Below the pieces are notes generated by a model, which saw only the letters and a list, made by a program, of their open reading frames with translations, had not been told where the DNA came from and ran no database searches. From sequence record MW879344.1: DNA of 64,000 bases. One strand, written 5' to 3'. Of the stretch, positions 29,331 to 60,754 are shown piece after piece (position 1 is the stretch's first letter; every line of letters starts with the position of its first letter). Made by a program: the position numbers and the translations under genes.

Positions 29331-29449
29331 CGGGAATTGGTGTAATGGCAGCACAACGTTATAACATAAATTCTTGTACAGGAATTTCACAGCAACCAAT
29401 ACAATTGCATAGGGAGCCGTGAGATAAGGTTCGATTCCTTGATTCCCGA
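29331..29449 (+). ncRNA. tRNA-like RNA with ACAGCAA-helix insert in anticodon arm (TTGCATA loop)
   Basis: CGGGAAT/ATTCCCG acceptor, D and T arms, AAATTC/GAATTT helix, ACAGCAA at 29389. Confidence 0.75.
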
Positions 29450-42409: not shown

Positions 42410-42485
42410 GCCTTTGTAGCTCAGTTGGTAGAGCGGGAATCTCTAAAATTCTTTGTCGTCGGTTCGAGTCCGACCATCGGCACCA
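42410..42485 (+). tRNA. amber suppressor tRNA (anticodon CUA)
   Basis: GGAAT-CT-CTA-AA-ATTCT anticodon arm, canonical D/T arms, ACCA end; two mismatches in acceptor stem. Confidence 0.85.
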
Positions 42486-47662: not shown

Positions 47663-47778
47663 GCAGTGATCGTCTAGAGGCTTAGGACACGAAAAAGCGA
47701 TTCTTGGTTAAGAATCTTACGGCATCAATAAACTTTCATTTCACGAACGTAACGCAGGTTCGAATCCTGCTCACTGCA
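47663..47778 (+). tRNA. tRNA-Glu(UUC)-like gene interrupted by 43-nt helix/ACGGCA insert (47692-47734)
   Basis: Glu-type D arm GTCTAGAGGCTTAGGAC; CG|TTC-ATTTCAC-GAACG stem restored on removing the insert. Confidence 0.8.
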
Positions 47779-48108: not shown

Positions 48109-48234
48109 GTGGGGTTAGCTCAGTCTGGTAGAGCAGCGAAAGAAAAAACAATGGAATCTTGAAAAGGATTCTAACAGCATTATATCTTCTACTGTAAATT
48201 CGCAGGTCGGTGAGTTCGAATCCACCATCCCACA
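48109..48234 (+). tRNA. tRNA-Tyr(GUA)-like gene interrupted by 51-nt helix/ACAGCA insert (48141-48191)
   Basis: GCGAA|CT-GTA-AA-TTCGC; short variable loop; bulged T stem. Confidence 0.7.
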
Positions 48235-48307
48235 CAAATTTGTCTTGACATGGTGTATCCTGTGTGTTATATTACTATCATCAATTAAACGAGATAGGAT
48301 TTAAATT

Positions 48308-49311: not shown

Positions 49312-49433
49312 GGCGAGTTAGCTCAGTTGGTAGAGCAGGAAAAAAACCGATTCTTGTATTGAATCGTACAGCAAACAATACTATTGCACTTTTAATGCCC
49401 TTGTCGGGGGTTCAATTCCCTCACTCGCCACCA
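49312..49433 (+). tRNA. tRNA-Lys(UUU) gene interrupted by 46-nt helix/ACAGCAA insert (49340-49385)
   Basis: removing the insert gives GG|GCA-CTTTTAA-TGCCC, a perfect 76-nt cloverleaf with ACCA. Confidence 0.85.
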
Positions 49434-53323: not shown

Positions 53324-53729
53324 AATTATTTGTGGATTTCCTGGTATAGGTAAGAGTAGTATTAAAAATATCGGCAAAGTACTTGATTTGGATAGTTCTT
53401 TGTATACCAAGAATTCTTTATTTCCTGCTAATTATATTGTTGATATTGTATCTGCAATGGATGAATATGATTATATTTTGGTAAGTACGCATGACGTACT
53501 TAGAAAAGAATTACAATCAATGGGTATTAGTTATACTAATGTATATCCAGAGATTGATTTAGGTGAAGAATACCACGACCGTTATGTTCAACGCGGAAGT
53601 CCTGAAAGTTTTATTAATTTTATTGATGAAAATTGGGATGACTTCATATACGAATTGCAGTATGATGATTCTGAATATGTTGAACTGGAAAGCGGTCAAT
53701 TTCTTTCAGATATTATAGCAAATATTTGA
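53316..53729 (+). CDS. small P-loop kinase-like protein
   Basis: IICGFPGIGKSS..VLDLDSS. Confidence 0.65.
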   Translation: MAKIICGFPGIGKSSIKNIGKVLDLDSSLYTKNSLFPANYIVDIVSAMDEYDYILVSTHDVLRKELQSMGISYTNVYPEIDLGEEYHDRYVQRGSPESFINFIDENWDDFIYELQYDDSEYVELESGQFLSDIIANI

Positions 53730-53755
53730 AACGAAAGAAAAAATTGTGGTATAAT
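53727..53755 (+). promoter_or_regulatory. TGAAAC-N17-TATAAT promoter
   Basis: exact motif, precedes permuted tRNA-like RNA. Confidence 0.7.
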
Positions 53756-53772
53756 ATAGTACATAAGGCAAC

Positions 53773-53889
53773 GGAATCTTACAGCAAAAATACTAATTTT
53801 TGATGAAAACGAAACGACGAGGTTCGAATCCTCACCCACGAATTGCCTTATTATTAGTGGGAGCACGGTGCTGGATAAACAAAGATTCC
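53773..53889 (+). ncRNA. circularly permuted tRNA-like RNA (YrlA/Y-RNA-like) 1
   Basis: GGAATCT-T-ACAGCAA...T-arm GAGG-TTCGAAT-CCTC, CCCAC/GTGGG closed acceptor, AGCA-CGG-TGCT, AGATTCC. Confidence 0.75.
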
Positions 53890-53910
53890 AGAATTTAAGT
53901 TAGAAAATTA

Positions 53911-53939
53911 TGAAACAAATCAAAAATTTGTGGTATAAT
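53911..53939 (+). promoter_or_regulatory. TGAAAC-N17-TATAAT promoter
   Basis: exact motif. Confidence 0.7.
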
Positions 53940-53951
53940 ATAAGAAGTAAA

Positions 53952-54059
53952 GCGGGATGGTGATTGATGAAAGCTATTATTTGATTCTAGAAAATCATAA
54001 TAAGCGAGTAAGAGAACAGGGTTCTTAATATCACGAGGGTTCGATCCCCTGTCGCTGCA
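53952..54059 (+). ncRNA. aberrant tRNA-like RNA
   Basis: T-arm GAGGG-TTCGATC-CCCT and imperfect acceptor; two internal hairpins replace D/anticodon arms. Confidence 0.45.
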
Positions 54060-54072
54060 CAAAGCAACAAAC

Positions 54073-54190
54073 GAAATCTCACAGCAAACAAAACAATTTT
54101 TTTCCTTGCATAGAAAAACGGTGGGGTTCGATTCCCCAACATCCAAGTTGCTTTTAGGATGTGTCTGGAAGGCCGTATGACAAAGATTTC
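54073..54190 (+). ncRNA. circularly permuted tRNA-like RNA 2 (TTGCATA loop)
   Basis: GAAATCT-C-ACAGCAA, GGGG-TTCGATT-CCCC, CATCC/GGATG, AGATTTC. Confidence 0.75.
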
Positions 54191-54366
54191 AGTTCCTATC
54201 AACTAAAAAGGATAGCATATAATGAGTTCTGAAGAAAATTTAGAATTATTAAATAAAATAATGAATGCCATTGCAAATGGTAAGTTGAATGAAACAATGA
54301 CTGAACTTGGTTACGAAGTAACTAAGAGTACTGATAAAAGTACAGAATGGTCATTAAAACAATAAT

Positions 54367-54440
54367 GTTCTGTTAGACAAATTGGTAAAGTCACCACCCT
54401 TTCAAGGTGGGGTTTACGGGTTCGACCCCCGTACAGAACG
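54367..54440 (+). tRNA. tRNA-Glu(UUC)
   Basis: cloverleaf, CT-TTC-AA. Confidence 0.9.
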
Positions 54441-54444
54441 CTAA

Positions 54445-54556
54445 AGGATTCGCACAGCAACAATAAAATCTTAAAATTCAATTGGTGAAAACAACCTTGC
54501 AGTTCGATTCTGCTTCCACAATGCGTGGATCTGGTCGATAGAAAAAACCGAATCCT
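54445..54556 (+). ncRNA. circularly permuted tRNA-like RNA 3
   Basis: AGGATTCG-C-ACAGCAA, GCAG-TTCGATT-CTGC, TCCAC/GTGGA, CGAATCCT. Confidence 0.72.
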
Positions 54557-54594
54557 GATTTTAATTAAGAAGTACTAAAGAATTTGATACACAC

Positions 54595-54747
54595 GGATTT
54601 ATACAGCAAACATAATCCTAAAATAAAACATACGATAATGTTACTAACTCGGAATTCGTTCCCTTCGTTAGTACTTGGCAACTTGGGTACTTAAATAAGT
54701 TGTATCACCTCACGTGTATCGGATTAGAGGTGATTATAAATAAATCC
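54595..54747 (+). ncRNA. derived member of the ACAGCAA family (permuted type) 4
   Basis: GGATTTA-T-ACAGCAA ... TAAATCC; AACAT/ATGTT, ACTAAC/GTTAGT, ATCACCTC/GAGGTGAT helices. Confidence 0.6.
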
Positions 54748-54783
54748 AGTAACACAAAAGTACCTTGAACGGTACTTTTTTAT

Positions 54784-54876
54784 GGTAGGTTGGCAGAGTT
54801 TGGCTTATTGCACTTGTCTTGAAAACAAGCGGGGGTTAACAGCCCTCCGAGGGTTCAAATCCCTCACCTACCTCCA
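54784..54876 (+). tRNA. tRNA-Ser(UGA)
   Basis: class II cloverleaf, CT-TGA-AA, CCA. Confidence 0.95.
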
Positions 54877-54887
54877 ATACAATAAAG

Positions 54888-55205
54888 GTGAACATGATGG
54901 ATTCAGTTGGTTTAATCGTTGTGTTTTTAGAACAACGTGTTCGTGGTTCTAATGAAATGCATTATGTAGTACAAGTTACTGAAGAAGGAACTTGTGACGT
55001 TCATGTTACTGACTCATGGAGTTTTAAGTCATGGGAAGATTTAAAAGAAACGCATCCTACTTTCAAAAGTTTGTTATATGAATTTTTTAATTCTTGCAAT
55101 TGGGCACCTTATGTAAACGAAAAAGAAATTTGGGCTGATGAAGTAATCGGCGGCGAAGGTCTTTATGATGATGATGATTCACATGTATTAAGTACTGATT
55201 TGTAA
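54888..55205 (+). CDS. hypothetical protein
   Basis: ORF track. Confidence 0.55.
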   Translation: MNMMDSVGLIVVFLEQRVRGSNEMHYVVQVTEEGTCDVHVTDSWSFKSWEDLKETHPTFKSLLYEFFNSCNWAPYVNEKEIWADEVIGGEGLYDDDDSHVLSTDL

Positions 55206-55213
55206 AGTTCAAT

Positions 55214-55288
55214 GGGGTACGTAGCTCAGTCTGGTAGAGCAGCCATGCGAAAACGGTGTGTCGGTGGTTCGAATCCACTCGCTCCCCA
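55214..55288 (+). tRNA. degenerate tRNA (Phe GAA-like, probable pseudo-tRNA)
   Basis: good D and T arms, mismatched acceptor and anticodon stems. Confidence 0.5.
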
Positions 55289-55292
55289 CTAA

Positions 55293-55349
55293 GGAATCTA
55301 GCAGCAACCATAACCCAATCAAACTTTTAATTTGACAATTATGGATTCC
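55293..55349 (+). ncRNA. mini ACAGCAA-family RNA carrying only a Lys(UUU) anticodon stem-loop
   Basis: GGAATCT-A-GCAGCAA ... TCAAA-CTTTTAA-TTTGA ... GGATTCC. Confidence 0.8.
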
Positions 55350-55527
55350 CGTTATTTTTAAGGATGTGATATGTCTAAAGAACAAGATGAATTTGAAAAA
55401 GAATATCTTATAAGTAAGCGTATTGATCCAAAAGCAACATTTTATATAAAATCTCGTAGAAAGAAAAATGGTTATAGAACTCGTGAATTGAATAATAAAT
55501 TTCAAGAATTTCTTAAACGATTTAAAG

Positions 55528-55619
55528 GGTAAAGTGGCAGAGCGGCTGAATGCAACCGCTTGGAAAGCGGTCAGGTTAGGTAATCCCTAGCCTCGTAGGT
55601 TCAAATCCTATCTTTACCG
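55528..55619 (+). tRNA. tRNA-Ser(GGA)
   Basis: class II cloverleaf, TT-GGA-AA. Confidence 0.93.
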
Positions 55620-55671
55620 CAAAGTAATAACTCCTTATTAAAGTGAAGTACAAAAACAATAGGAGAATATT

Positions 55672-56028
55672 ATGTACGAGAAAGATGATGGTCCATTAAC
55701 TGATGAACAAATTCGTATCATCCGTGAAATGAATAGCCATCTGAATCAAACTGATTTAGAAATTGATTTAAATTGGTTGAACAGTGATATACAAGGAAAT
55801 GCAATGTATTACGACTATTATTACAAAGTTGACGGTGATCTTCGTCGTTATACCAGTAATCAAGAGTTAACGGATGCGGAAATCAATAATATTTTTGGTG
55901 CAAGCAAACAAGTAGTAATGCTTACTCCAATTGTATTTGAACGTGACGTAACTACTGAAGACAAATCTGGTAAAAAGATTAAAAGTACTGAAAAAGTACA
56001 TGTTGGCTTCTTAGGATATGTGGAATAA
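55672..56028 (+). CDS. hypothetical protein
   Basis: AGGAG RBS. Confidence 0.55.
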   Translation: MYEKDDGPLTDEQIRIIREMNSHLNQTDLEIDLNWLNSDIQGNAMYYDYYYKVDGDLRRYTSNQELTDAEINNIFGASKQVVMLTPIVFERDVTTEDKSGKKIKSTEKVHVGFLGYVE

Positions 56029-56030
56029 AA

Positions 56031-56717
56031 ATGTCAAAAAAGACTGATAAAGAAGTAAAAGATACAAAAGAAAAGTACACTGTTGTTAAACACGGTTCAC
56101 TAACACTAGTGAATACACCAACAGTAAAAACTTTCTATATGAATGGTTCTATTGATCATCCTACATTAACTAAGTTCCAAAAGTTCTTAGAAGATACATG
56201 TACGGAAAATAATAAAATTGATACCGAAGAAACTGAACGCAAAGAAAAGGATGAATTTAAAAAGATTCATGATCCTGAATCTAAGCCAGAGTTTGTTCCT
56301 GCTAAACGTAAAGTTGAGCGTATCAATCTGGTTATCAATAGTGGTGGTGGTTTAGTTGCAGTAATGCTAGAAGTTGTAGCACTAATGAAAACTTCACCAA
56401 TTCCAATTGATACCTACTGTTTTGGTTCTGCAATGAGTGCAGCTTTCTTTATCTTCTTACATGGCAAACGCCGTTTTGTTGGTGAAGGTGCCTCATTTAT
56501 GACACATAGCATTGGTGCTATGGCATGGGATAATGTACCAAACATGACAATTCGTATGGAGTACTTGGTTAAACAAAACGAGTACGCACAACAGGAAATT
56601 GCTAAACGTACTGGAATTCCTCTTGAAAAATTAAAAGAGAAAGAACATCTCGATTGGTACTTGACTGCTGAAGAAGCGTTAGATGTTAAAATCGGTGAAT
56701 ATTTGATCCGAGATTAA
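56031..56717 (+). CDS. clpP: ClpP-like protease
   Basis: INSGGG, GSAMSAA (catalytic Ser), FMTHS, DWYLTAEEAL. Confidence 0.8.
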   Translation: MSKKTDKEVKDTKEKYTVVKHGSLTLVNTPTVKTFYMNGSIDHPTLTKFQKFLEDTCTENNKIDTEETERKEKDEFKKIHDPESKPEFVPAKRKVERINLVINSGGGLVAVMLEVVALMKTSPIPIDTYCFGSAMSAAFFIFLHGKRRFVGEGASFMTHSIGAMAWDNVPNMTIRMEYLVKQNEYAQQEIAKRTGIPLEKLKEKEHLDWYLTAEEALDVKIGEYLIRD

Positions 56718-56757
56718 ATATAAATTCTGGATTCGAAAGAATCCTTTTTTAAGTGAG

Positions 56758-56988
56758 ATGATTATGGACAATCAACACAAACATATTAAAGGGTATCGTG
56801 ACCTTTCACAAAAAGAAGTGGATGCGATGAATGAGATTAAACAACTGGCTGCCATCGTTGGAGAGTTGATAGAAAAACTTGAAAGTACTGAATCAGTAGA
56901 TAAACGTTGGCTTGCAATTGCAAAGACGGATTTACAAAAAGGATTCATGTCAGCAGTACGAAGTGTGGCTAAACCAGATTCCTTCTAA
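56758..56988 (+). CDS. acb2: Acb2-family cyclic-nucleotide sponge (anti-CBASS)
   Basis: MDNQHKHIKGYRDLSQKEVDAMNEIK...RWLAIAKTDLQKGFMSAVRSVAKPDSF matches the Acb2 pattern. Confidence 0.85.
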   Translation: MIMDNQHKHIKGYRDLSQKEVDAMNEIKQLAAIVGELIEKLESTESVDKRWLAIAKTDLQKGFMSAVRSVAKPDSF

Positions 56989-56997
56989 GGAACAAAG

Positions 56998-57378
56998 ATG
57001 TATACAACGGTTAATCATGCTGATATAATTGATGATATTATAACTGAAATACTTGAAATTTATACATGTCGAGTTGAAATTTATAAAGATGGTCATTTAT
57101 TCACTCAGTACGGGTATAATACTAAACATAATGTGAATTATCATATAAATGTAAAGTACTATAATGATAATCCAAGTAATGGTGATAAAGCGAATAGCTT
57201 AATGGTAGAATTTAAATTTACCAATAGAGTTCCGAAGGGACTGAAAAATCATTACAAGTTATCTATACCTGAAATAACAAGTCTTACAGAAGAACGGCAT
57301 TTTCAATTAATGTTTGTCACTGATGATATGTATTTGGATTATGAAGTTATAAATAAATTACGTACACATATTGTGTAA
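56998..57378 (+). CDS. TEExxFQ-motif family protein
   Basis: LTEERHFQLM. Confidence 0.6.
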   Translation: MYTTVNHADIIDDIITEILEIYTCRVEIYKDGHLFTQYGYNTKHNVNYHINVKYYNDNPSNGDKANSLMVEFKFTNRVPKGLKNHYKLSIPEITSLTEERHFQLMFVTDDMYLDYEVINKLRTHIV

Positions 57379-57389
57379 AAAAAAAGTTT

Positions 57390-57443
57390 TAGAATCTAAC
57401 AGCAATCAAAACTCATTGGATATATGAAAAAAGATAGATTCTA
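57390..57443 (+). ncRNA. mini ACAGCAA-family RNA (TCAT-TGGATAT-ATGA hairpin)
   Basis: TAGAATCT-A-ACAGCAA ... AGATTCTA; abuts tRNA-Ile. Confidence 0.75.
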
Positions 57444-57449
57444 GTATTT

Positions 57450-57522
57450 GGGAATATAATTCAGTTGGTAGAATGCTCGACCGATAATCGAGTCGCCGCT
57501 GGTTCGAGTCCAGCTATTCCCA
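57450..57522 (+). tRNA. tRNA-Ile(GAU), C at position 33
   Basis: cloverleaf, CTCGA-CC-GAT-AA-TCGAG. Confidence 0.85.
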
Positions 57523-57621
57523 CGAAGTAGTTCAGTACTGAAAAATGTACAGTGAAATTATTCAACACTATAGGTAGCACTTTGAATGAATCAGTAAGCC
57601 TATAAGTAACTACAATAAATT

Positions 57622-57750
57622 TGGAATTCAACAGCAATTCACTTACTAAAAACAGCTACCTCACGGTTTGTAGGTTCAAGTCCTACCTTGTACTTTCGAG
57701 TACATGTGGTGAAAATGGTAAACACGGCTGTCCAAAAGAAATGAATTCCA
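57622..57750 (+). ncRNA. circularly permuted tRNA-like RNA 5 (Leu-type D arm, long variable arm)
   Basis: TGGAATTCA-ACAGCAA, ACAGC/GCTGT, GTAGG-TTCAAGT-CCTAC, TGTACT-TTCG-AGTACA, TGAATTCCA. Confidence 0.8.
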
Positions 57751-57802
57751 GTATTAATTAAGACATAAATATTCTTATACACTTTTTTGTAAGGATATAA
57801 TT

Positions 57803-58402
57803 ATGGAAATGAAAAAGTTGATGGAAGATATTTCTGCCATCATGGAAGGACAATTACCTGGTTATTATTATCATGGAAGTTCTGCCCCAATATCAAATTT
57901 TAGTGATGAGTTTGTTGGTAGAGGAAATGATGAATACGGTCCGGGAATATATTTTAGTTCAGTTCCAAATACTTCTATAGGTTATGCAAAAGATGGCGGT
58001 TCTAATGGAATGGTATATCAGTGCGAAATCAATTTAAGAAAAGAACTATCTAAAAAAACTAGAGTTAATAAAGCAGTACTATTAAAATTAATGCAAAATA
58101 CACCTGATGAAGATGCATATACTAACTGGAATGAAAATAAAAATGTTGCTTATAGAACAGCATTACAGGGTTATGTAGATGAAGGTAATATGTATGATGC
58201 GTTAATGGGTGTTTGGTACGATTGGTATAGAGAATATCCTGTTCAATTCGTGCGTTCACTAGTACAGTTAGGATATGATGGATACATATATACTTTTGCA
58301 AGCGGTGAACGTTTTATTATAGTATATAATCCAGCAAGTATAAAAGTTGTAAACACATTCAATCCAGAAGAAGCTATGCAGAAACTGATTGGAAGTGAAT
58401 AA
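57803..58402 (+). CDS. ADP-ribosyltransferase-like (ART-fold) protein, probably late-expressed
   Basis: YYHGS...F...YGPGIYFS..YA...VY pattern; CATAAATA late word upstream. Confidence 0.55.
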   Translation: MEMKKLMEDISAIMEGQLPGYYYHGSSAPISNFSDEFVGRGNDEYGPGIYFSSVPNTSIGYAKDGGSNGMVYQCEINLRKELSKKTRVNKAVLLKLMQNTPDEDAYTNWNENKNVAYRTALQGYVDEGNMYDALMGVWYDWYREYPVQFVRSLVQLGYDGYIYTFASGERFIIVYNPASIKVVNTFNPEEAMQKLIGSE

Positions 58403-58409
58403 TAAGATT

Positions 58410-58529
58410 TGGAATTCAACAGCAAATCATTCTAAACCCGTAGCATGTCGTAGGTTCAAGTCCTACCAGTACTTTCGAGTACTGTAGCTCAGTTGGTAGA
58501 GCAGCCACCTTAAAAAGAAATGAATTCCA
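58410..58529 (+). ncRNA. circularly permuted tRNA-like RNA 6 (canonical class I D arm)
   Basis: T-arm, then CAGTACT-TTCG-AGTACTG acceptor, then TA-GCTC-AGTTGGTA-GAGC D-arm, inside TGGAATTCA/TGAATTCCA. Confidence 0.85.
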
Positions 58530-58560
58530 GTATTAATTAAAACAACATGAGTATAAATCA

Positions 58561-59010
58561 ATGTCTGATAAGCATCAATTTAAAGTAAACATCGGTGATT
58601 GGTCACAAGATGGTCATAATCAATATGATGTTTTAGTTCTTAACAGTACTAAACCAGTAGATGAAGTACAAAAAGCATTTAAAAAAGCTGCAACTGATTT
58701 ACATTTACTAGTAAATGGTCGTTTTCTAATTGCAGATGAATTTGAAGATTGTAGTCTATCTGAAGACCATGCAGAAGTTCTTAAAAATGCAGGTGTAAAA
58801 TTTGATGATTTAGTGTATAATGATGGCGATGATGAAGAACCAAATTATATTATTGAAGGTTCAAGTGATATGACTATCCTTGTGATGCGGATCGCCCAAC
58901 TTGAATTGGACTTTGAATTTGAAATTACGAATGATGCAATTCCGAACTTTAACGGGTTCTGGACAGAAGAACAAATGCCATCAATCGGATATGGTTTGTA
59001 TAACATATAA
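58561..59010 (+). CDS. conserved phage hypothetical protein
   Basis: IGDWSQDGH motif. Confidence 0.65.
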   Translation: MSDKHQFKVNIGDWSQDGHNQYDVLVLNSTKPVDEVQKAFKKAATDLHLLVNGRFLIADEFEDCSLSEDHAEVLKNAGVKFDDLVYNDGDDEEPNYIIEGSSDMTILVMRIAQLELDFEFEITNDAIPNFNGFWTEEQMPSIGYGLYNI

Positions 59011-59019
59011 AACAAGTTT

Positions 59020-59084
59020 TGGAATCTAGCAGCACCCATAAAATGAAATCAACTGTTAATTGAAAAATTCAAAAATGGATTCCA
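59020..59084 (+). ncRNA. mini ACAGCAA-family RNA carrying only an Asn(GUU) anticodon stem-loop
   Basis: TGGAATCT-A-GCAGCAC ... TCAA-CTGTTAA-TTGA ... GGATTCCA. Confidence 0.78.
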
Positions 59085-59103
59085 GCCTATTTCGGAGTAA
59101 AAA

Positions 59104-59373
59104 ATGTATTATGCTCGATTAGAATATCCAAACAATGGATATGAGATTGAAAGAATACGTCTTAAAGCCTTAGATCGCAAAAAGTACTACCCAGTAGTTT
59201 CGATTGATATTGGTAGTTCAAGTACTCGCATATATCTTGAAGGTGATAAGAATGCATATAATAGTGTGAACTTTGAATTCTATACCAAACATGGTGATGA
59301 ATATATTCTTGAAGATATTTTCGAAGACCCTGATTTAAATCCGTACTTGGATGATGATGATGAAGAATATTAA
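59104..59373 (+). CDS. hypothetical protein
   Basis: GGAG RBS. Confidence 0.6.
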   Translation: MYYARLEYPNNGYEIERIRLKALDRKKYYPVVSIDIGSSSTRIYLEGDKNAYNSVNFEFYTKHGDEYILEDIFEDPDLNPYLDDDDEEY

Positions 59374-59393
59374 ATAAAAATACCACAAATAAA

Positions 59394-59422
59394 TGAAACG
59401 CTTCAAAAAATTGTGGTATAAT
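59394..59422 (+). promoter_or_regulatory. TGAAAC-N17-TATAAT promoter
   Basis: exact motif; TACCACAA/TTGTGGTA inverted repeat overlaps. Confidence 0.7.
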
Positions 59423-59441
59423 ATAAGTAAGTTAAACAAGA

Positions 59442-59513
59442 GGTTATGTCGTATAAAGGTTATTACGGAGAGCTGTTAACTCTTTTATCTTGGTTCGATT
59501 CCAAGCATGACCG
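59442..59513 (+). tRNA. tRNA-Asn(GUU)
   Basis: cloverleaf, CT-GTT-AA. Confidence 0.9.
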
Positions 59514-59630
59514 CAAAAAGTTAAATTCACCAGGCGTACTATGGTGGGAAAGGTATCATGATACCAATTCGAATAGAATACGTATTAAACCCTTGAACGG
59601 TTTTCTGTAAACTCAATTTAACAAATAATT

Positions 59631-59685
59631 AAGAATCTAACAGCAATCAAAACTCATTCGATTATATGAAAAAAGATAGATTCTT
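59631..59685 (+). ncRNA. mini ACAGCAA-family RNA (TCAT-TCGATTAT-ATGA)
   Basis: near-duplicate of 57390-57443; abuts tRNA-Gln. Confidence 0.75.
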
Positions 59686-59690
59686 GTTTT

Positions 59691-59763
59691 AGGAGTATGG
59701 TGTAATTGGTTAGCACACGTGACTTTGACTCACGTAGTTGAGGTTCGAGTCCTTATATTCCTG
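59691..59763 (+). tRNA. tRNA-Gln(UUG)
   Basis: cloverleaf, CT-TTG-AC. Confidence 0.9.
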
Positions 59764-59914
59764 CAAATTAAAATTTCATTCATTTCCTTGTGTGAAACAA
59801 GCTGGTATGATTCCCCTTGCTTGTAAAATTATCGAACGGGAACCGCGTTGCACCTGTACAGGTCAGATTGTAAAGATCGAGTATGTACAGTACTGAGAGC
59901 GGCAGTACAATAAA

Positions 59915-59996
59915 GCGGGATTAGCTCAGTGGTAGAGCACTTGCCTTCCAAGCAAGAGGCGAATAGGTTCCATCGGTTCGAATCCGATATTCCGCT
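59915..59996 (+). tRNA. tRNA-Gly(UCC) with 15-nt variable region
   Basis: CTTGC-CT-TCC-AA-GCAAG, U73. Confidence 0.85.
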
Positions 59997-60114
59997 CAAA
60001 CTAAACAAACAATAAGGTGATTTTTATGCTATAGAATCCTAGTACTGGTCCTCCTAAAGAATTTAATTCTGATATAAACAACTCAAAATTAAACTACTAT
60101 AGGAAGAACATACC

Positions 60115-60441
60115 ATGTTAAACAAAGAACAATATATTACTGTAAAAAATACTTGGAAAGCTGTAAAAGAACATAACATTTTTGATCATGTGATCTATAA
60201 TGTACTTCGTGGAGTCCCATCTGATACTGGTTTCGCACCAATTACAGACAGGGGTCGTTTACACGCTAACAACAATGACCCGTTCAATATGTACAATTAC
60301 GCAGTTCGTGAAATTCATTATGAATTAAACGAAAAACGGTACAATTACGAAAAGACAGTAAAGCATTATTCTGAACTATTCGGCATTGAATTTACAAAAG
60401 AACTCATCGAAGAAATTGTTTCTTTGATTAAAGTTAAATAA
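60115..60441 (+). CDS. hypothetical protein
   Basis: ORF track. Confidence 0.65.
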   Translation: MLNKEQYITVKNTWKAVKEHNIFDHVIYNVLRGVPSDTGFAPITDRGRLHANNNDPFNMYNYAVREIHYELNEKRYNYEKTVKHYSELFGIEFTKELIEEIVSLIKVK

Positions 60442-60449
60442 CAGAATTA

Positions 60450-60506
60450 AAGAATCCAGCAGCAACTAAAACTCATTCGCTTAATATGAAAAAGAAACGG
60501 ATTCTT
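60450..60506 (+). ncRNA. mini ACAGCAA-family RNA (TCAT-TCGCTTAAT-ATGA)
   Basis: AAGAATCC-A-GCAGCAA ... GGATTCTT. Confidence 0.72.
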
Positions 60507-60514
60507 GTTTTTAT

Positions 60515-60754
60515 TTGGAAAACGATATGAAACGTAACTACTTCCATTTTGTTACTTTTACTAAACCAAAGGTATCTACAGCTAAAAGTGCAGACGATGT
60601 AGCACAATTAATTGAAGATACTATCAATAAAATGCAAGAAGATGGTGAAAAATATGGAGAAATTCATATTGATATGCCAGAAGACTTAACACCAGAAGAA
60701 CAACAAATGTTCATAGAAGAAATTATGAAACGATTTGGTGGAACTGATGAGTAA
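60515..60754 (+). CDS. small hypothetical protein
   Basis: ORF track. Confidence 0.5.
   Translation: MENDMKRNYFHFVTFTKPKVSTAKSADDVAQLIEDTINKMQEDGEKYGEIHIDMPEDLTPEEQQMFIEEIMKRFGGTDE

What the first reader, a model, noticed from the sequence alone, without database searches (positions are those of the whole stretch)
55293..60506. Five 54-65 nt mini-RNAs that display only an anticodon-like stem-loop (Lys UUU, Asn GUU, GAU/GCU-like)
Seen in sequence: 55293-55349 carries TCAAA-CTTTTAA-TTTGA, a perfect Lys anticodon arm. 59020-59084 carries TCAA-CTGTTAA-TTGA, an Asn arm about 360 bp upstream of the real tRNA-Asn. 57390, 59631 and 60450 are near-duplicates with TCAT-x-ATGA hairpins whose loops contain GAT, GAT and GCT; these loops are less canonical. 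The first of the three abuts tRNA-Ile(GAU). D, T and acceptor arms are absent, and the only other conserved part is the helix+ACAGCAA. Inference: these are minimal decoy substrates or sponges for anticodon nucleases or tRNA-modifying enzymes, which would be an RNA-only anti-defence mechanism.
Basis: partly seen in the sequence, partly recalled or inferred. Interest (0 to 1): 0.85.

Follow-up and report, generated by a model that had tools for sequence, protein, structure and literature searches.

The report
Phage Y-RNA-like RNAs in tRNA cluster
The five mini-RNAs are the smallest members of a large family of phage non-coding RNAs that share a stem-plus-ACAGCAA module, most likely the docking site for the phage's own Ro60-like RNA-binding protein, so they look like viral Y RNAs rather than free-standing anticodon decoys.

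Summary
The window is part of Erwinia phage pEa_SNUABM_49, a Rak2-like jumbo phage. All five elements exist as described. Each has a covarying terminal helix followed by ACAGCAA or GCAGCAA.

They are not a set of five. I count 15 members in the window, in three forms:
- five minis;
- six long forms, five of which carry a tRNA-like part (Rfam YrlA at sub-threshold score on 58443-58505);
- four complete tRNA genes with the module inserted in the anticodon stem.

The same module occurs in tRNA arrays of unrelated phages, such as Felix-O1-like, mycobacteriophage, Listeria and Enterococcus phages and uncultured ones. There it lies next to a DUF2828+DUF7788 gene.

This phage carries that gene about 150-200 kb from the elements. 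Its AlphaFold model matches Ro60/TROVE structures as the top six PDB hits.

Best reading: these are Y-RNA-like partners of a phage Ro60-like protein, working beside the phage's tRNA-repair enzymes (Rnl1, Pnkp, RlaP).

Two minis do display canonical anticodon loops. The Asn-type hairpin is invariant in seven phages. The Lys-type loop is only partly conserved. The other three loops are not anticodon-like.

An "RNA-only decoy" is not supported. Bait or tether use of the anticodon hairpins remains possible. This is a new variant of a known kind.

The parts
55293..55349 (+). Mini Y-like RNA. Terminal helix, GCAGCAA bulge, second helix CCATAA/TTATGG, and hairpin TCAAA-CTTTTAA-TTTGA (Lys UUU-type loop).
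   Evidence: CM R1 37.5 bits, E 8e-6. The Yersinia ortholog is identical. The loop differs in GAP32, CBB and XbC2.
57391..57442 (+). Mini Y-like RNA. Helix AGAATCTA/TAGATTCT, ACAGCAA, hairpin TCAT-TGGATAT-ATGA and an A-rich 3' strand. Ends 7 nt before tRNA-Ile.
   Evidence: CM R1 48 bits, E 3e-8. Hairpin covariation.
59020..59084 (+). Mini Y-like RNA. Terminal helix, GCAGCAC, helix CCAT/ATGG and hairpin TCAA-CTGTTAA-TTGA (Asn GUU-type loop).
   Evidence: CM R1 39.9 bits, E 2e-6. The 15-nt hairpin is invariant in 7 phages.
59632..59684 (+). Mini Y-like RNA, a paralogue of 57391. Ends 6 nt before tRNA-Gln.
   Evidence: CM R1 49.7 bits, E 1e-8. blastn finds it only in Rak2-like jumbo phages, and it is unannotated in all of them.
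60450..60506 (+). Mini Y-like RNA. Helix AAGAATCC/GGATTCTT, GCAGCAA, hairpin TCAT-TCGCTTAAT-ATGA. Followed by a T-run and an ORF.
   Evidence: CM R1 41.6 bits, E 9e-7.
53773..53889 (+). Long member. Terminal helix + ACAGCAA, carrying a T arm and a capped acceptor-like stem. A strong extended -10 promoter-like site lies at 53726-53755.
   Evidence: Orthologs in CBB, GAP32, XbC2 and Yersinia phage.
54073..54190 (+). Long member with a T arm and a capped acceptor-like stem. The cap loop holds a conserved GTTGCT.
54445..54556 (+). Long member with a T arm. Starts 4 nt after tRNA-Glu.
   Evidence: CM R1 E 0.016.
54595..54747 (+). Long member (153 nt) whose cargo is not tRNA-like.
   Evidence: Orthologs in CBB, XbC2, Munch and fENko-Kae01.
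57623..57749 (+). YrlA-like long member. Terminal helix + ACAGCAA, anticodon-stem equivalent ACAGC/GCTGT, variable arm, T arm, acceptor stem capped by TTCG, and D arm.
58411..58528 (+). YrlA-like long member with the same architecture.
   Evidence: Rfam YrlA RF02553 matches 58443-58505 at 40.5 bits (gathering 69), E 2e-6. The fold has z = -3.5. The GAP32 ortholog aligns to the full YrlA model at 44.7 bits.
29331..29449 (+). tRNA gene with the module inserted in the 5' strand of the anticodon stem (hairpin AAATTC/GAATTT + ACAGCAA).
   Evidence: (annotated tRNA-Leu, 119 nt).
47663..47778 (+). tRNA gene with the inserted module (variant ACGGCAT). My reading of the anticodon loop is ATTTCAC (UUC).
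   Evidence: The Yersinia and XbC2 orthologs keep the stem but have different loops.
48109..48236 (+). tRNA gene with the inserted module (ACAGCAT). Anticodon loop CTGTAAA (Tyr GUA). Not called by ARAGORN or Rfam.
49312..49433 (+). tRNA-Lys(UUU) gene with the module inserted after the second pair of the anticodon stem.
   Evidence: Rfam tRNA 46.5 bits across 119 nt.. The CBB ortholog keeps CTTTTAA with a changed stem. The Yersinia ortholog has an ATGATAA loop.
55215..55287 (+). Degenerate tRNA directly upstream of the Lys-type mini. Its orthologs in CBB, GAP32 and XbC2 carry the inserted module, which is absent here.
   Evidence: Rfam tRNA 36.4 bits. Not called by ARAGORN..

Best explanation
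The five mini-RNAs are small Y-RNA-like non-coding RNAs, comparable to bacterial YrlB beside YrlA.

**Proposed architecture**
- The 5' and 3' ends pair into a terminal helix.
- Next to it is a large asymmetric bulge: ACAGCAA on the 5' strand and an A-rich run on the 3' strand.
- I infer that this module docks onto the phage's own Ro60-like ring protein (DUF2828 + vWA-like DUF7788, gene at 101383-102906 of the same genome).
- The distal part is a variable cargo. It is a plain hairpin in three minis and a copy of a tRNA anticodon arm in two. In the longer relatives it is a tRNA-like elbow (T arm, capped acceptor, D arm). In four genes it is a whole tRNA.

**Proposed function (inferred)**
Known Y RNAs gate Ro60 and tether it to partner enzymes. 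By analogy, I infer that the cargo brings tRNA-recognising proteins or tRNA substrates to the Ro-like protein. This would be part of the phage's tRNA quality-control and repair apparatus (Rnl1, Pnkp, RlaP nucleotidyltransferase, CCA-adding enzyme, Thg1-like), which counters host attacks on tRNAs.

**Shown here:** the RNA family, its covariation, its link to the Ro-like gene across phages, the Ro60 fold of the protein model, and the YrlA likeness.

**Inferred:** physical binding, and what the cargo recruits.
For: 1. **The module defines a family.**
   - There are 15 members in the window, all on the + strand and all in the tRNA cluster.
   - The CM finds 34 further hits in 18 of 100 other loci and none in the T4 tRNA region.
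2. **The helix covaries while ACAGCAA stays fixed.** Helix sequences seen across phages:
   - GGAATC/GATTCC
   - AGACCG/CGGTCT
   - GGACACA/TGTGTCC
   - AGGTTCA/TGAACCT
   - AGAGAGC/GCTCTCT
3. **Long members score as Rfam YrlA.** They reach 31-46 bits in several phages. The RNA next to a mycobacteriophage 'Ro-like RNA binding protein' gene scores 39.3 bits and carries the same ACAGCAA module.
4. **The module lies next to the DUF2828 gene in unrelated phages.**
   - EC6
   - Clautastrophe
   - Listeria LMTA-94, Enterococcus EFDG1 and Vibrio phi-pp2
   - metagenomic contigs L133-L135
   - IMG/VR loci L013, L035, L045, L049 and L109
5. **The protein is Ro60-like.**
   - Pfam gives DUF2828 (E 4e-33) and DUF7788 (E 1e-40).
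   - The AlphaFold model has pLDDT 87.9 and pTM 0.87.
   - The top six Foldseek hits in the PDB are all Ro60/TROVE entries, E 6e-9 to 2e-6.
   - The gene is in this phage at 99.5% identity.
6. **Precedent.** Phage phiLo Ro60 binds two Y-like RNAs encoded upstream of its gene. Y RNAs are described as a 5'-3' stem with a large bulge holding a short conserved motif (PMC12135203; PMC4201824). Some jumbo phages are reported to have a ROT/TROVE protein (PMC7824862).
7. **RNA-repair context.** The near-identical phage pEa_SNUABM_47 encodes Rnl1, Pnkp, RlaP, a second RNA ligase adjacent to the Ro-like gene, a CCA-adding enzyme and a Thg1-like enzyme. DUF2828 neighbours elsewhere include RNA ligase, KptA-type and CCA-adding genes.
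Against: - No binding or expression data exist for this phage.
- The conserved motif (ACAGCAA) differs from the published Ro-binding motifs (GNCGAAN0-1G, CGAA).
- No element reaches the Rfam YrlA gathering score (best 46 against 69).
- The five minis have no tRNA-like domain at all.
- In Rak2-like phages the Ro-like gene is about 150-200 kb from the elements, and nothing of this kind lies directly upstream of it. The linkage argument therefore rests on other phages.
- L136/L137 carry the gene without a detectable module nearby.
- The elements chosen for the covariation counts were selected for having a helix.
- A universal host factor, or RNA-only activity, could also explain a module that recurs in tRNA arrays.
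Confidence: 0.7

Rival explanations
1. RNA-only decoys. The minis act alone as minimal anticodon stem-loop substrates or sponges for host anticodon nucleases or tRNA-modifying enzymes. The helix+ACAGCAA would serve only as a stabilising clamp.
For: - Two minis carry exact 7-nt anticodon loops.
- The Asn hairpin is invariant in 7 phages.
- Lys-type CTTTTAA hairpins recur as cargo in unrelated contigs (L013 and L035).
- Anti-defence genes lie among the elements.
Against: - Three of five loops are not anticodon-like.
- The Lys loop is lost in CBB and XbC2.
- An invariant 7-nt bulge and an A-rich opposite strand are not needed for a clamp.
- The same module carries tRNA elbows without any anticodon loop.
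- The module tracks a Ro60-like gene across phages.
Confidence: 0.1
2. A processing or insulating element of polycistronic tRNA transcripts, or a new small self-cleaving ribozyme. It would define tRNA ends or keep neighbouring tRNAs from misfolding, independent of any Ro-like protein.
For: - Many copies lie 2-8 nt from a tRNA end.
- The module occurs with different helices open or capped, as natural ribozymes do.
- It is found in tRNA arrays of phages from very different hosts.
Against: - There is no match to any Rfam ribozyme family at E up to 5.
- Only about 7 fixed nucleotides are present.
- Copies also stand alone before ORFs or directly upstream of the Ro-like gene with no adjacent tRNA called (L134 and L135).
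- A copy inside the anticodon stem of conserved tRNA genes would cut the tRNA.
- This idea does not explain the YrlA-like cargo or the gene linkage.
Confidence: 0.1
3. The inserted copies are true introns, removed by an unknown endonuclease and sealed by the phage ligases. The free-standing copies would then be excised or derived forms, and the module would be the splice signal.
For: - Four tRNA genes carry a 46-53 nt insert in the anticodon arm. Their acceptor, D and T arms are otherwise canonical.
- These insert-bearing genes are conserved in relatives.
- The phage encodes Rnl1, Pnkp and a second ligase.
Against: - The insert position varies: after stem pair 2, after pair 3, or after the whole 5' strand.
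- I saw no bulge-helix-bulge motif by eye.
- The insert is too small for a group I intron (established knowledge), and Rfam gave no intron hit.
- No splicing endonuclease was seen in the annotated half of the genome.
- At least the Glu copy duplicates a canonical tRNA-Glu in the window, and relatives carry canonical Lys and Tyr genes.
Confidence: 0.07
4. DNA-level repeats. These would be short inverted repeats used for recombination, homing or replication within the tRNA island, with no RNA role.
For: Many copies share a roughly 15-nt identical core inside one 35-kb region. tRNA content and anticodon arms differ between related phages.
Against: - Orientation is strictly one strand.
- Compensatory changes keep pairing, including G-U pairs, which only make sense in RNA.
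- tRNA-like cargo is conserved.
- One member has a promoter-like site directly upstream.
Confidence: 0.03

Closest known systems
Bacterial and phage Y RNAs of the YrlA/YrlB type (Rfam RF02553; Chen et al. 2014, PMC4201824)
   Same: - Both have a terminal 5'-3' stem, then a large asymmetric internal loop with a short conserved motif near the 5' end.
- Both then carry a variable module, which in YrlA is a tRNA-like domain in the order T arm, capped acceptor stem, D arm.
- Several paralogues occur per genome.
- They are encoded beside a Ro60-type gene in many genomes.
- The long members here align to the YrlA model. The RNA beside a mycobacteriophage Ro-like gene carries the same ACAGCAA module.
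   Different: - The conserved motif is ACAGCAA, not GNCGAAN0-1G.
- Scores stay below Rfam's gathering threshold.
- There are 15 copies in this window, spread through the tRNA cluster and far from the protein gene.
- Some cargos are bare anticodon-arm copies.
- Some copies are embedded in complete tRNA genes.
Thermus phage phiLo Ro60 with Yrl1/Yrl2 (PMC12135203; PDB 9KOP, 9L5Y)
   Same: A phage-encoded Ro60-fold protein with phage-encoded Y-like RNAs. The phiLo protein is among the top structural matches of the protein encoded by this phage.
   Different: - The phiLo protein is a recognisable TROVE protein and its RNAs carry the CGAA motif.
- Here the protein is of the DUF2828/DUF7788 type. Sequence profiles give no significant match to TROVE chains (E 0.9).
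- The RNAs here carry ACAGCAA.
- Binding has been shown for phiLo, not here.
Phage-encoded tRNAs that neutralise tRNA-targeting defences (for example the T5 tRNA-Lys against PARIS, PMC11464382)
   Same: Both are phage RNAs from a tRNA cluster that present Lys or other anticodon arms in a counter-defence setting.
   Different: Those are complete, translatable tRNAs that replace cleaved host tRNAs. The minis lack acceptor, D and T arms, and the module-bearing tRNAs have a roughly 50-nt insert in the anticodon stem.
T4 species 1 and 2 RNAs (rnaC, rnaD) in the T4 tRNA cluster
   Same: Small stable RNAs of unknown function encoded among phage tRNA genes. rnaC contains a T-arm-like segment.
   Different: The CM gives no hit to the helix+ACAGCAA module in the T4 tRNA region at E up to 0.001.

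Membership tests
Y RNA (YrlA/YrlB type) | A terminal stem formed by the 5' and 3' ends, next to a large internal loop or bulge | tested here: met
   The helix covaries across 34 minis and 17 close relatives. The bulge has ACAGCAA on the 5' strand and an A-rich 3' strand in all members.
Y RNA (YrlA/YrlB type) | The conserved Ro-binding motif GNCGAAN0-1G / CGAA in that loop | tested here: not met
   The invariant motif is CAGCA, within ACAGCAA. The published motif comes from PMC4201824 and PMC12135203.
Y RNA (YrlA/YrlB type) | A tRNA-like domain (T arm, capped acceptor, D arm). This defines YrlA, not YrlB. | tested here: not met
   None of the five minis has one. It is present in long members of the same family (57623-57749, 58411-528).
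Y RNA (YrlA/YrlB type) | Reaches the Rfam RF02553 gathering score (69 bits) | tested here: not met
   The best scores are 40.5 bits in the window and 45.6 bits in relatives. A mycobacteriophage RNA next to its Ro-like gene also reaches only 39.3 bits.
Y RNA (YrlA/YrlB type) | Encoded close to, and on the same strand as, a Ro60-type gene | tested here: inconclusive
   Not met in this phage: the gene is at 101383-102906 and the elements at about 277-308 kb. Met in EC6, Clautastrophe, LMTA-94, EFDG1, phi-pp2, L133-L135, L013, L035, L049 and L109.
Y RNA (YrlA/YrlB type) | Physically bound by the Ro60-type protein | not testable with these tools
   Needs binding or structural data.
Ro60/TROVE protein (the proposed partner) | A ring of HEAT-like repeats plus a vWA domain | tested here: met
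   The model has pLDDT 87.9. The top six PDB matches are Ro60/TROVE entries over the full length, with TM 0.47-0.60. One homolog carries Pfam VWA_2.
Ro60/TROVE protein (the proposed partner) | Match to the Pfam TROVE model, or significant sequence similarity to solved Ro60 chains | tested here: not met
   Pfam gives DUF2828 + DUF7788 only. The profile against PDB sequences gives E 0.9 to TROVE chains.
Anticodon stem-loop mimic (decoy) | A 7-nt loop with U at position 2, a purine after the triplet, and a closing stem of 4-5 pairs | tested here: inconclusive
   Met by 55293 (CTTTTAA, 5 pairs) and 59020 (CTGTTAA, 4 pairs). Not met by 57391, 59632 and 60450 (loops of 7-9 nt).
Anticodon stem-loop mimic (decoy) | The loop is conserved in relatives while the surroundings change | tested here: inconclusive
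   The Asn type is invariant in 7 phages, although its stem is invariant too. The Lys type is lost in CBB and XbC2. The third type has a variable loop and a covarying stem.
Known small self-cleaving ribozymes (hammerhead, twister, HDV-like, pistol, hatchet and others) | Match to the family's covariance model | tested here: not met
   No such hit at E up to 5 in 53600-60700, nor at gathering score in the whole window.
tRNA introns (group I or bulge-helix-bulge) | A group I core, or a bulge-helix-bulge at the exon-intron junctions | tested here: inconclusive
   There is no Rfam intron hit. Inserts are 46-53 nt at varying positions. Bulge-helix-bulge was judged by eye only.

The most novel reading that the evidence does not exclude
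The Ro-binding module may be a portable tag that the phage attaches to pieces of tRNA: anticodon arms, tRNA elbows, and even whole Lys, Tyr and Glu-type tRNAs. A Ro60-like ring would then hold these baits. Such an RNP could capture or sense host anticodon nucleases, or hand cleaved anticodon loops to the phage's Rnl1/Pnkp/RlaP repair enzymes. That would make it a protein-RNA counter-defence device built from tagged tRNA parts.
Probability: 0.2. Interest if true: 0.85.

Novelty: new variant of a known kind. Interest (0 to 1): 0.62.

Why it matters
- **A concrete partner for the RNA.** Y RNAs and Ro60 are known from animals, bacteria and a few phages. The partner RNAs of the very common DUF2828-type Ro-like proteins do not seem to have been defined as a class. 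Relatives of this protein occur in 709 of about 50,700 phage records.
- **A recognisable signature.** A covarying terminal helix followed by ACAGCAA gives a simple mark for such RNAs across many phage lineages.
- **Unannotated features explained.** It accounts for dozens of unannotated 'gaps', 'pseudo-tRNAs' and 'intron-containing tRNAs' in jumbo-phage tRNA islands.
- **Modular cargo.** The cargo can be an anticodon arm, a tRNA elbow or a whole tRNA.
- **A testable link.** This connects phage tRNA clusters, RNA repair and tRNA-targeting host defences.

Tried and rejected
- **Rfam.** A gathering-score scan of the whole window gave only tRNAs. The permissive scan gave YrlA as the only meaningful non-tRNA hit.
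- **Single-sequence folding.** The minis are not significantly stable on their own.
- **Ribozyme idea.** No known family matches. An HDV-like topology does not fit, because the first strand pairs with the very 3' end.
- **Pairing of ACAGCAA with cargo loops.**
  - ACAG can pair with CUGU of the Tyr and Asn loops.
  - AGCAA can pair with GTTGCT in one cap loop.
  - Neither pairing is general across the family.
- **T4 rnaC/rnaD as relatives.** Rejected.
- **IMG/VR pattern scan.** My first pattern had too few plain bases. The accepted pattern returned mostly chance hits, which I then filtered by helix pairing and by the CM.
- **Literature.**
  - Searches for the motif string, for tRNA introns in Rak2-like phages and for decoy RNAs found nothing on this element.
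  - One search was wasted on 'treasure trove'.
  - Burroughs and Aravind 2016 is not held in the library.
  - No supplement of Chen et al. 2014 is held.
- **Sequence searches of the Ro-like protein.** Searches against PDB chains gave nothing significant. Only the fold comparison did.
- **Enrichment test in the window.** 11 of 28 +-strand motif occurrences have an 8-bp partner, against 14.6% of random positions. This is weak, because AT-rich sequence pairs easily.
  - a stretch of the hairpin ribozyme of a plant-virus satellite;
  - a pistol ribozyme;
  - fragments of Y RNA and RNase P RNA;
  - a CRISPR repeat;
  - some E. coli anticodon arms.

Full report
**Origin.** The window is 100% identical to Erwinia phage pEa_SNUABM_49 (MW879344.1, positions 248001-312000). 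This is a Rak2-like jumbo phage of the genus Eneladusvirus. ARAGORN finds 20 tRNAs. Rfam adds two weak or interrupted ones.

**Check of the observation.**
- Each has a terminal helix of 6-8 pairs (GGAATC.../...GATTCC or AGAATCTA/TAGATTCT).
- ACAGCAA or GCAGCAA follows at once on the 5' strand.
- An A-rich run precedes the helix on the 3' strand.
- 55293 carries TCAAA-CTTTTAA-TTTGA, and 59020 carries TCAA-CTGTTAA-TTGA.
- The other three share a TCAT/ATGA hairpin with 7-9 nt loops.
- Folded alone, the minis are weak (z -0.8 to -1.5), so the case for structure rests on comparison with relatives.

**The family is larger than five.** A scan for the motif preceded by a strand with a nearby complement found more copies. 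There are three topologies.
1. Minis: the five of the finding.
2. Long open forms at 53773-53889, 54073-54190, 54445-54556, 54595-54747, 57623-57749 and 58411-58528.
   - Five of the six carry at least a T arm.
   - In 57623 and 58411 the full order is T arm, acceptor stem capped by a small loop, then D arm.
   - 54595-54747 has a different cargo.
3. Four otherwise normal tRNA genes in which the helix is capped by a loop. The whole module sits in the 5' half of the anticodon arm: 29331-29449, 47663-47778, 48109-48236 (Tyr GUA loop) and 49312-49433 (Lys UUU).

GenBank records annotate these as long, 'pseudo' or 'undetermined' tRNAs. The degenerate tRNA at 55215-55287 is the ortholog of such a chimera in CBB, GAP32 and XbC2, but lacks the insert.

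**Conservation among relatives.**
- blastn of one mini finds it only in Rak2-like phages of Erwinia, Serratia, Yersinia, Pectobacterium, Cronobacter, Klebsiella, Salmonella and Xanthomonas. It is never annotated.
- The Asn-type hairpin is invariant in seven phages, while its linkers change (0/90 against 25/152 positions).
- The Lys-type loop is kept in the Yersinia phage, is CTTTTAC in GAP32, and is replaced in CBB and XbC2.
- In the third type the stem shows compensatory change (C-G to U-A, A-U to U-A or C-G). The loop varies in length and sequence apart from a 3' UAU/AAU.
- In the chimeric tRNAs the lower anticodon stem covaries (GCA/TGC, AGC/GCT, CCA/TGG, ACT/AGT). The loop can change identity between orthologs, for example Lys UUU here and ATGATAA in the Yersinia phage.

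**The family extends beyond Rak2-like phages.** A pattern scan of IMG/VR gave mostly chance hits. Contigs of 45-185 kb and 400 kb stood out with several copies each. Those copies sit inside tRNA arrays, on the tRNA strand, and have quite different helix sequences.

On 34 minis from many lineages:
- 87.5% of helix cells pair, against 65% in shuffles.
- 61 cells changed on both sides, against 17.8 expected.
- 8 of 9 pairs show compensatory change.
- Only C-A-G-C-A is invariant.

The sequences were picked for having a helix, so the pair-type diversity is the informative part. A covariance model built on that alignment gave these results:
- 13 hits in the window, all on the + strand.
- 34 hits in 18 of 100 other loci (798 kb).
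- No hit in the T4 tRNA region at E up to 0.001.

**What kind of RNA this is.**
- Rfam's YrlA (Y RNA-like) model matches 58443-58505 at 40.5 bits (E 2e-6, gathering 69).
- It matches long members in GAP32, XbC2, CBB and two uncultured phages at 31-46 bits, twice over the full model length.
- In the full-length alignment the YrlA terminal stem and internal loop correspond in position to our helix and ACAGCAA/A-rich bulge.
- Chen et al. 2014 define Y RNAs by a stem containing the Ro60 site, a motif GNCGAAN0-1G near the 5' end, and, for YrlA, a tRNA-like domain. They found them within 4 kb of Ro60 genes in 254 bacteria and 22 phages.

**The protein partner.**
- The window phage's own record names no functions. 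The 99.7% identical pEa_SNUABM_47 record lists an Rnl1-type RNA ligase, Pnkp, a second RNA ligase, a CCA-adding enzyme, a Thg1-like enzyme and TyrRS.
- The 508-aa 'hypothetical protein' next to the second ligase is Pfam DUF2828 + DUF7788. A 'nucleotidyltransferase' elsewhere in the genome is RlaP.
- The AlphaFold model of the 508-aa protein (pLDDT 87.9, pTM 0.87) has six best PDB matches: Xenopus, human and Deinococcus Ro60, and the Thermus phage phiLo Ro60/TROVE entries. E is 6e-9 to 2e-6 and TM is 0.47-0.60 over the full length.
- Sequence methods alone do not see this relationship.
- The gene is present in the window's phage at 101383-102906.
- Relatives occur in 709 phage records. These include mycobacteriophage genes named 'Ro-like RNA binding protein'.

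**Linkage of RNA and protein.** In Rak2-like phages the gene is far from the elements, and nothing similar lies directly upstream of it. In other lineages they are adjacent.
- Three metagenomic DUF2828 genes have a helix+NCAGCAA element 14-30 nt before the start codon (L133, L134, L135). A fourth gene (L136/L137) has none.
- IMG/VR loci that were found only through the RNA pattern (L013, L035, L045, L049, L109) turn out to hold a DUF2828-like gene within the same locus of 15 kb or less.
- E. coli phage EC6 (Felix-O1-like) has four elements with helix AGACC.../...GGTCT, starting about 340 nt downstream of the gene, among its tRNAs.
- Mycobacteriophage Clautastrophe has two minis and one YrlA-scoring long form (39.3 bits) within 300 nt downstream of its Ro-like gene. 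Their helices are GC-rich and they carry the same ACAGCAA.
- Listeria LMTA-94 and Enterococcus EFDG1 have two or three copies just upstream of the gene. A weak hit overlaps the gene start in Vibrio phi-pp2.
- The Listeria and Enterococcus cases are close to sequences used to train the model. The EC6, mycobacteriophage and Vibrio cases are not.
- The phiLo study shows a phage Ro60 binding two Y-like RNAs encoded upstream of its gene.

**Mechanism.**
- I conclude that the helix+ACAGCAA module is most likely the docking site for the phage's Ro60-like protein, and that the elements are Y-RNA-like. The five minis are the YrlB-like, cargo-poor end of the family.
- Binding itself is inferred. So is the role of the cargo.
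- Known Y RNAs gate Ro60 and tether it to partner enzymes. By analogy, the tRNA-like and anticodon-arm cargos may bring tRNA-recognising enzymes or substrates to the ring.
- This would happen in a genome that also encodes the T4-type anticodon-loop repair pair (Rnl1, Pnkp) and RlaP.
- The neighbourhood includes an Acb2/Tad1-like sponge gene and an ART-PolyVal ADP-ribosyltransferase. The latter is flanked by the two YrlA-like RNAs, with that synteny kept in CBB and GAP32.

- The sequence observation is largely right, but it covers only the small members.
- Only two of the five loops are anticodon-like.
- 'RNA-only' is not supported.
- A bait or decoy role for the anticodon hairpins, as part of an RNP, remains open.

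**Novelty.** Phage Y RNAs and phage Ro60 are known. I found no description of the following:
- ACAGCAA as the signature motif;
- its pairing with the DUF2828-type protein;
- its spread through tRNA arrays of many phage groups;
- the mini forms with anticodon-arm cargo;
- the module-bearing tRNA genes.

The library is incomplete, and one key paper was not held. I rate this a new variant of a known kind.

Noticed in passing
window 56764-56985 (+): A 74-aa ORF matches Pfam Acb2/Tad1 hairpin domain (E 7e-19). This is a likely cyclic-nucleotide sponge against CBASS or Thoeris, inside the tRNA island.
   Followed up: no
window 57803-58399 (+): A 199-aa ORF matches ART-PolyVal ADP-ribosyltransferase (E 2e-11; weak PARP match). 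It is flanked by the two YrlA-like RNAs at 57623 and 58411. The same order is kept in CBB and GAP32.
   Followed up: partly
window 56031-56714 (+): A ClpP-like protease ORF (Pfam CLP_protease, E 2e-19) lies in the tRNA island. The near-identical pEa_SNUABM_47 also lists a second ClpP and a ClpA-like ATPase elsewhere.
   Followed up: no
window 53950-54062 (+): An odd tRNA-like stretch with a clear T arm follows a strong promoter-like site (53910-53939). Neither ARAGORN nor Rfam calls it a tRNA, and it has no ACAGCAA module.
   Followed up: no
window 42410-42485 (+): A tRNA with anticodon CTA, labelled 'Pyl' by ARAGORN and in GenBank. It may be an amber suppressor. A CTA-anticodon tRNA also follows the Ro-like gene in contig L133.
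   Followed up: no
L003 2159-2279 against window 49312-49433: Orthologous module-bearing tRNAs share the same acceptor stem but have different anticodon arms (Lys UUU here, ATGATAA in the Yersinia phage). A second pair differs as UUC against UCA. This suggests anticodon-arm turnover next to the module.
   Followed up: partly
L141 3966-4005 (Vibrio phage phi-pp2); L133-L135: The module lies 14-30 nt before, or overlaps, the start codon of the Ro-like gene. This could allow the protein to regulate its own translation. The Vibrio hit is weak (E 0.28).
   Followed up: partly
L140 6849-8060 (Listeria phage LMTA-94): A 'tRNA-splicing ligase' (RtcB-type) gene lies 1.3 kb downstream of the Ro-like gene and its three module RNAs. 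This echoes the bacterial rsr-yrlA-rtcB arrangement.
   Followed up: no
pEa_SNUABM_47 53390-59249 (L131): A cluster of NAD-related genes lies elsewhere in the genome: NMN adenylyltransferase/ADP-ribose pyrophosphatase, nicotinamide phosphoribosyltransferase, a Sir2-like protein and a Nudix hydrolase. This suggests NAD reconstitution against NAD-depleting defences.
   Followed up: no
window 54073-54190 and CBB L004 4457-4574: The loop capping the acceptor-like stem keeps GTTGCT while its stem changes. GTTGCT is complementary to AGCAA(C) of the module, so a loop-bulge or intermolecular contact is possible in this one paralogue.
   Followed up: no
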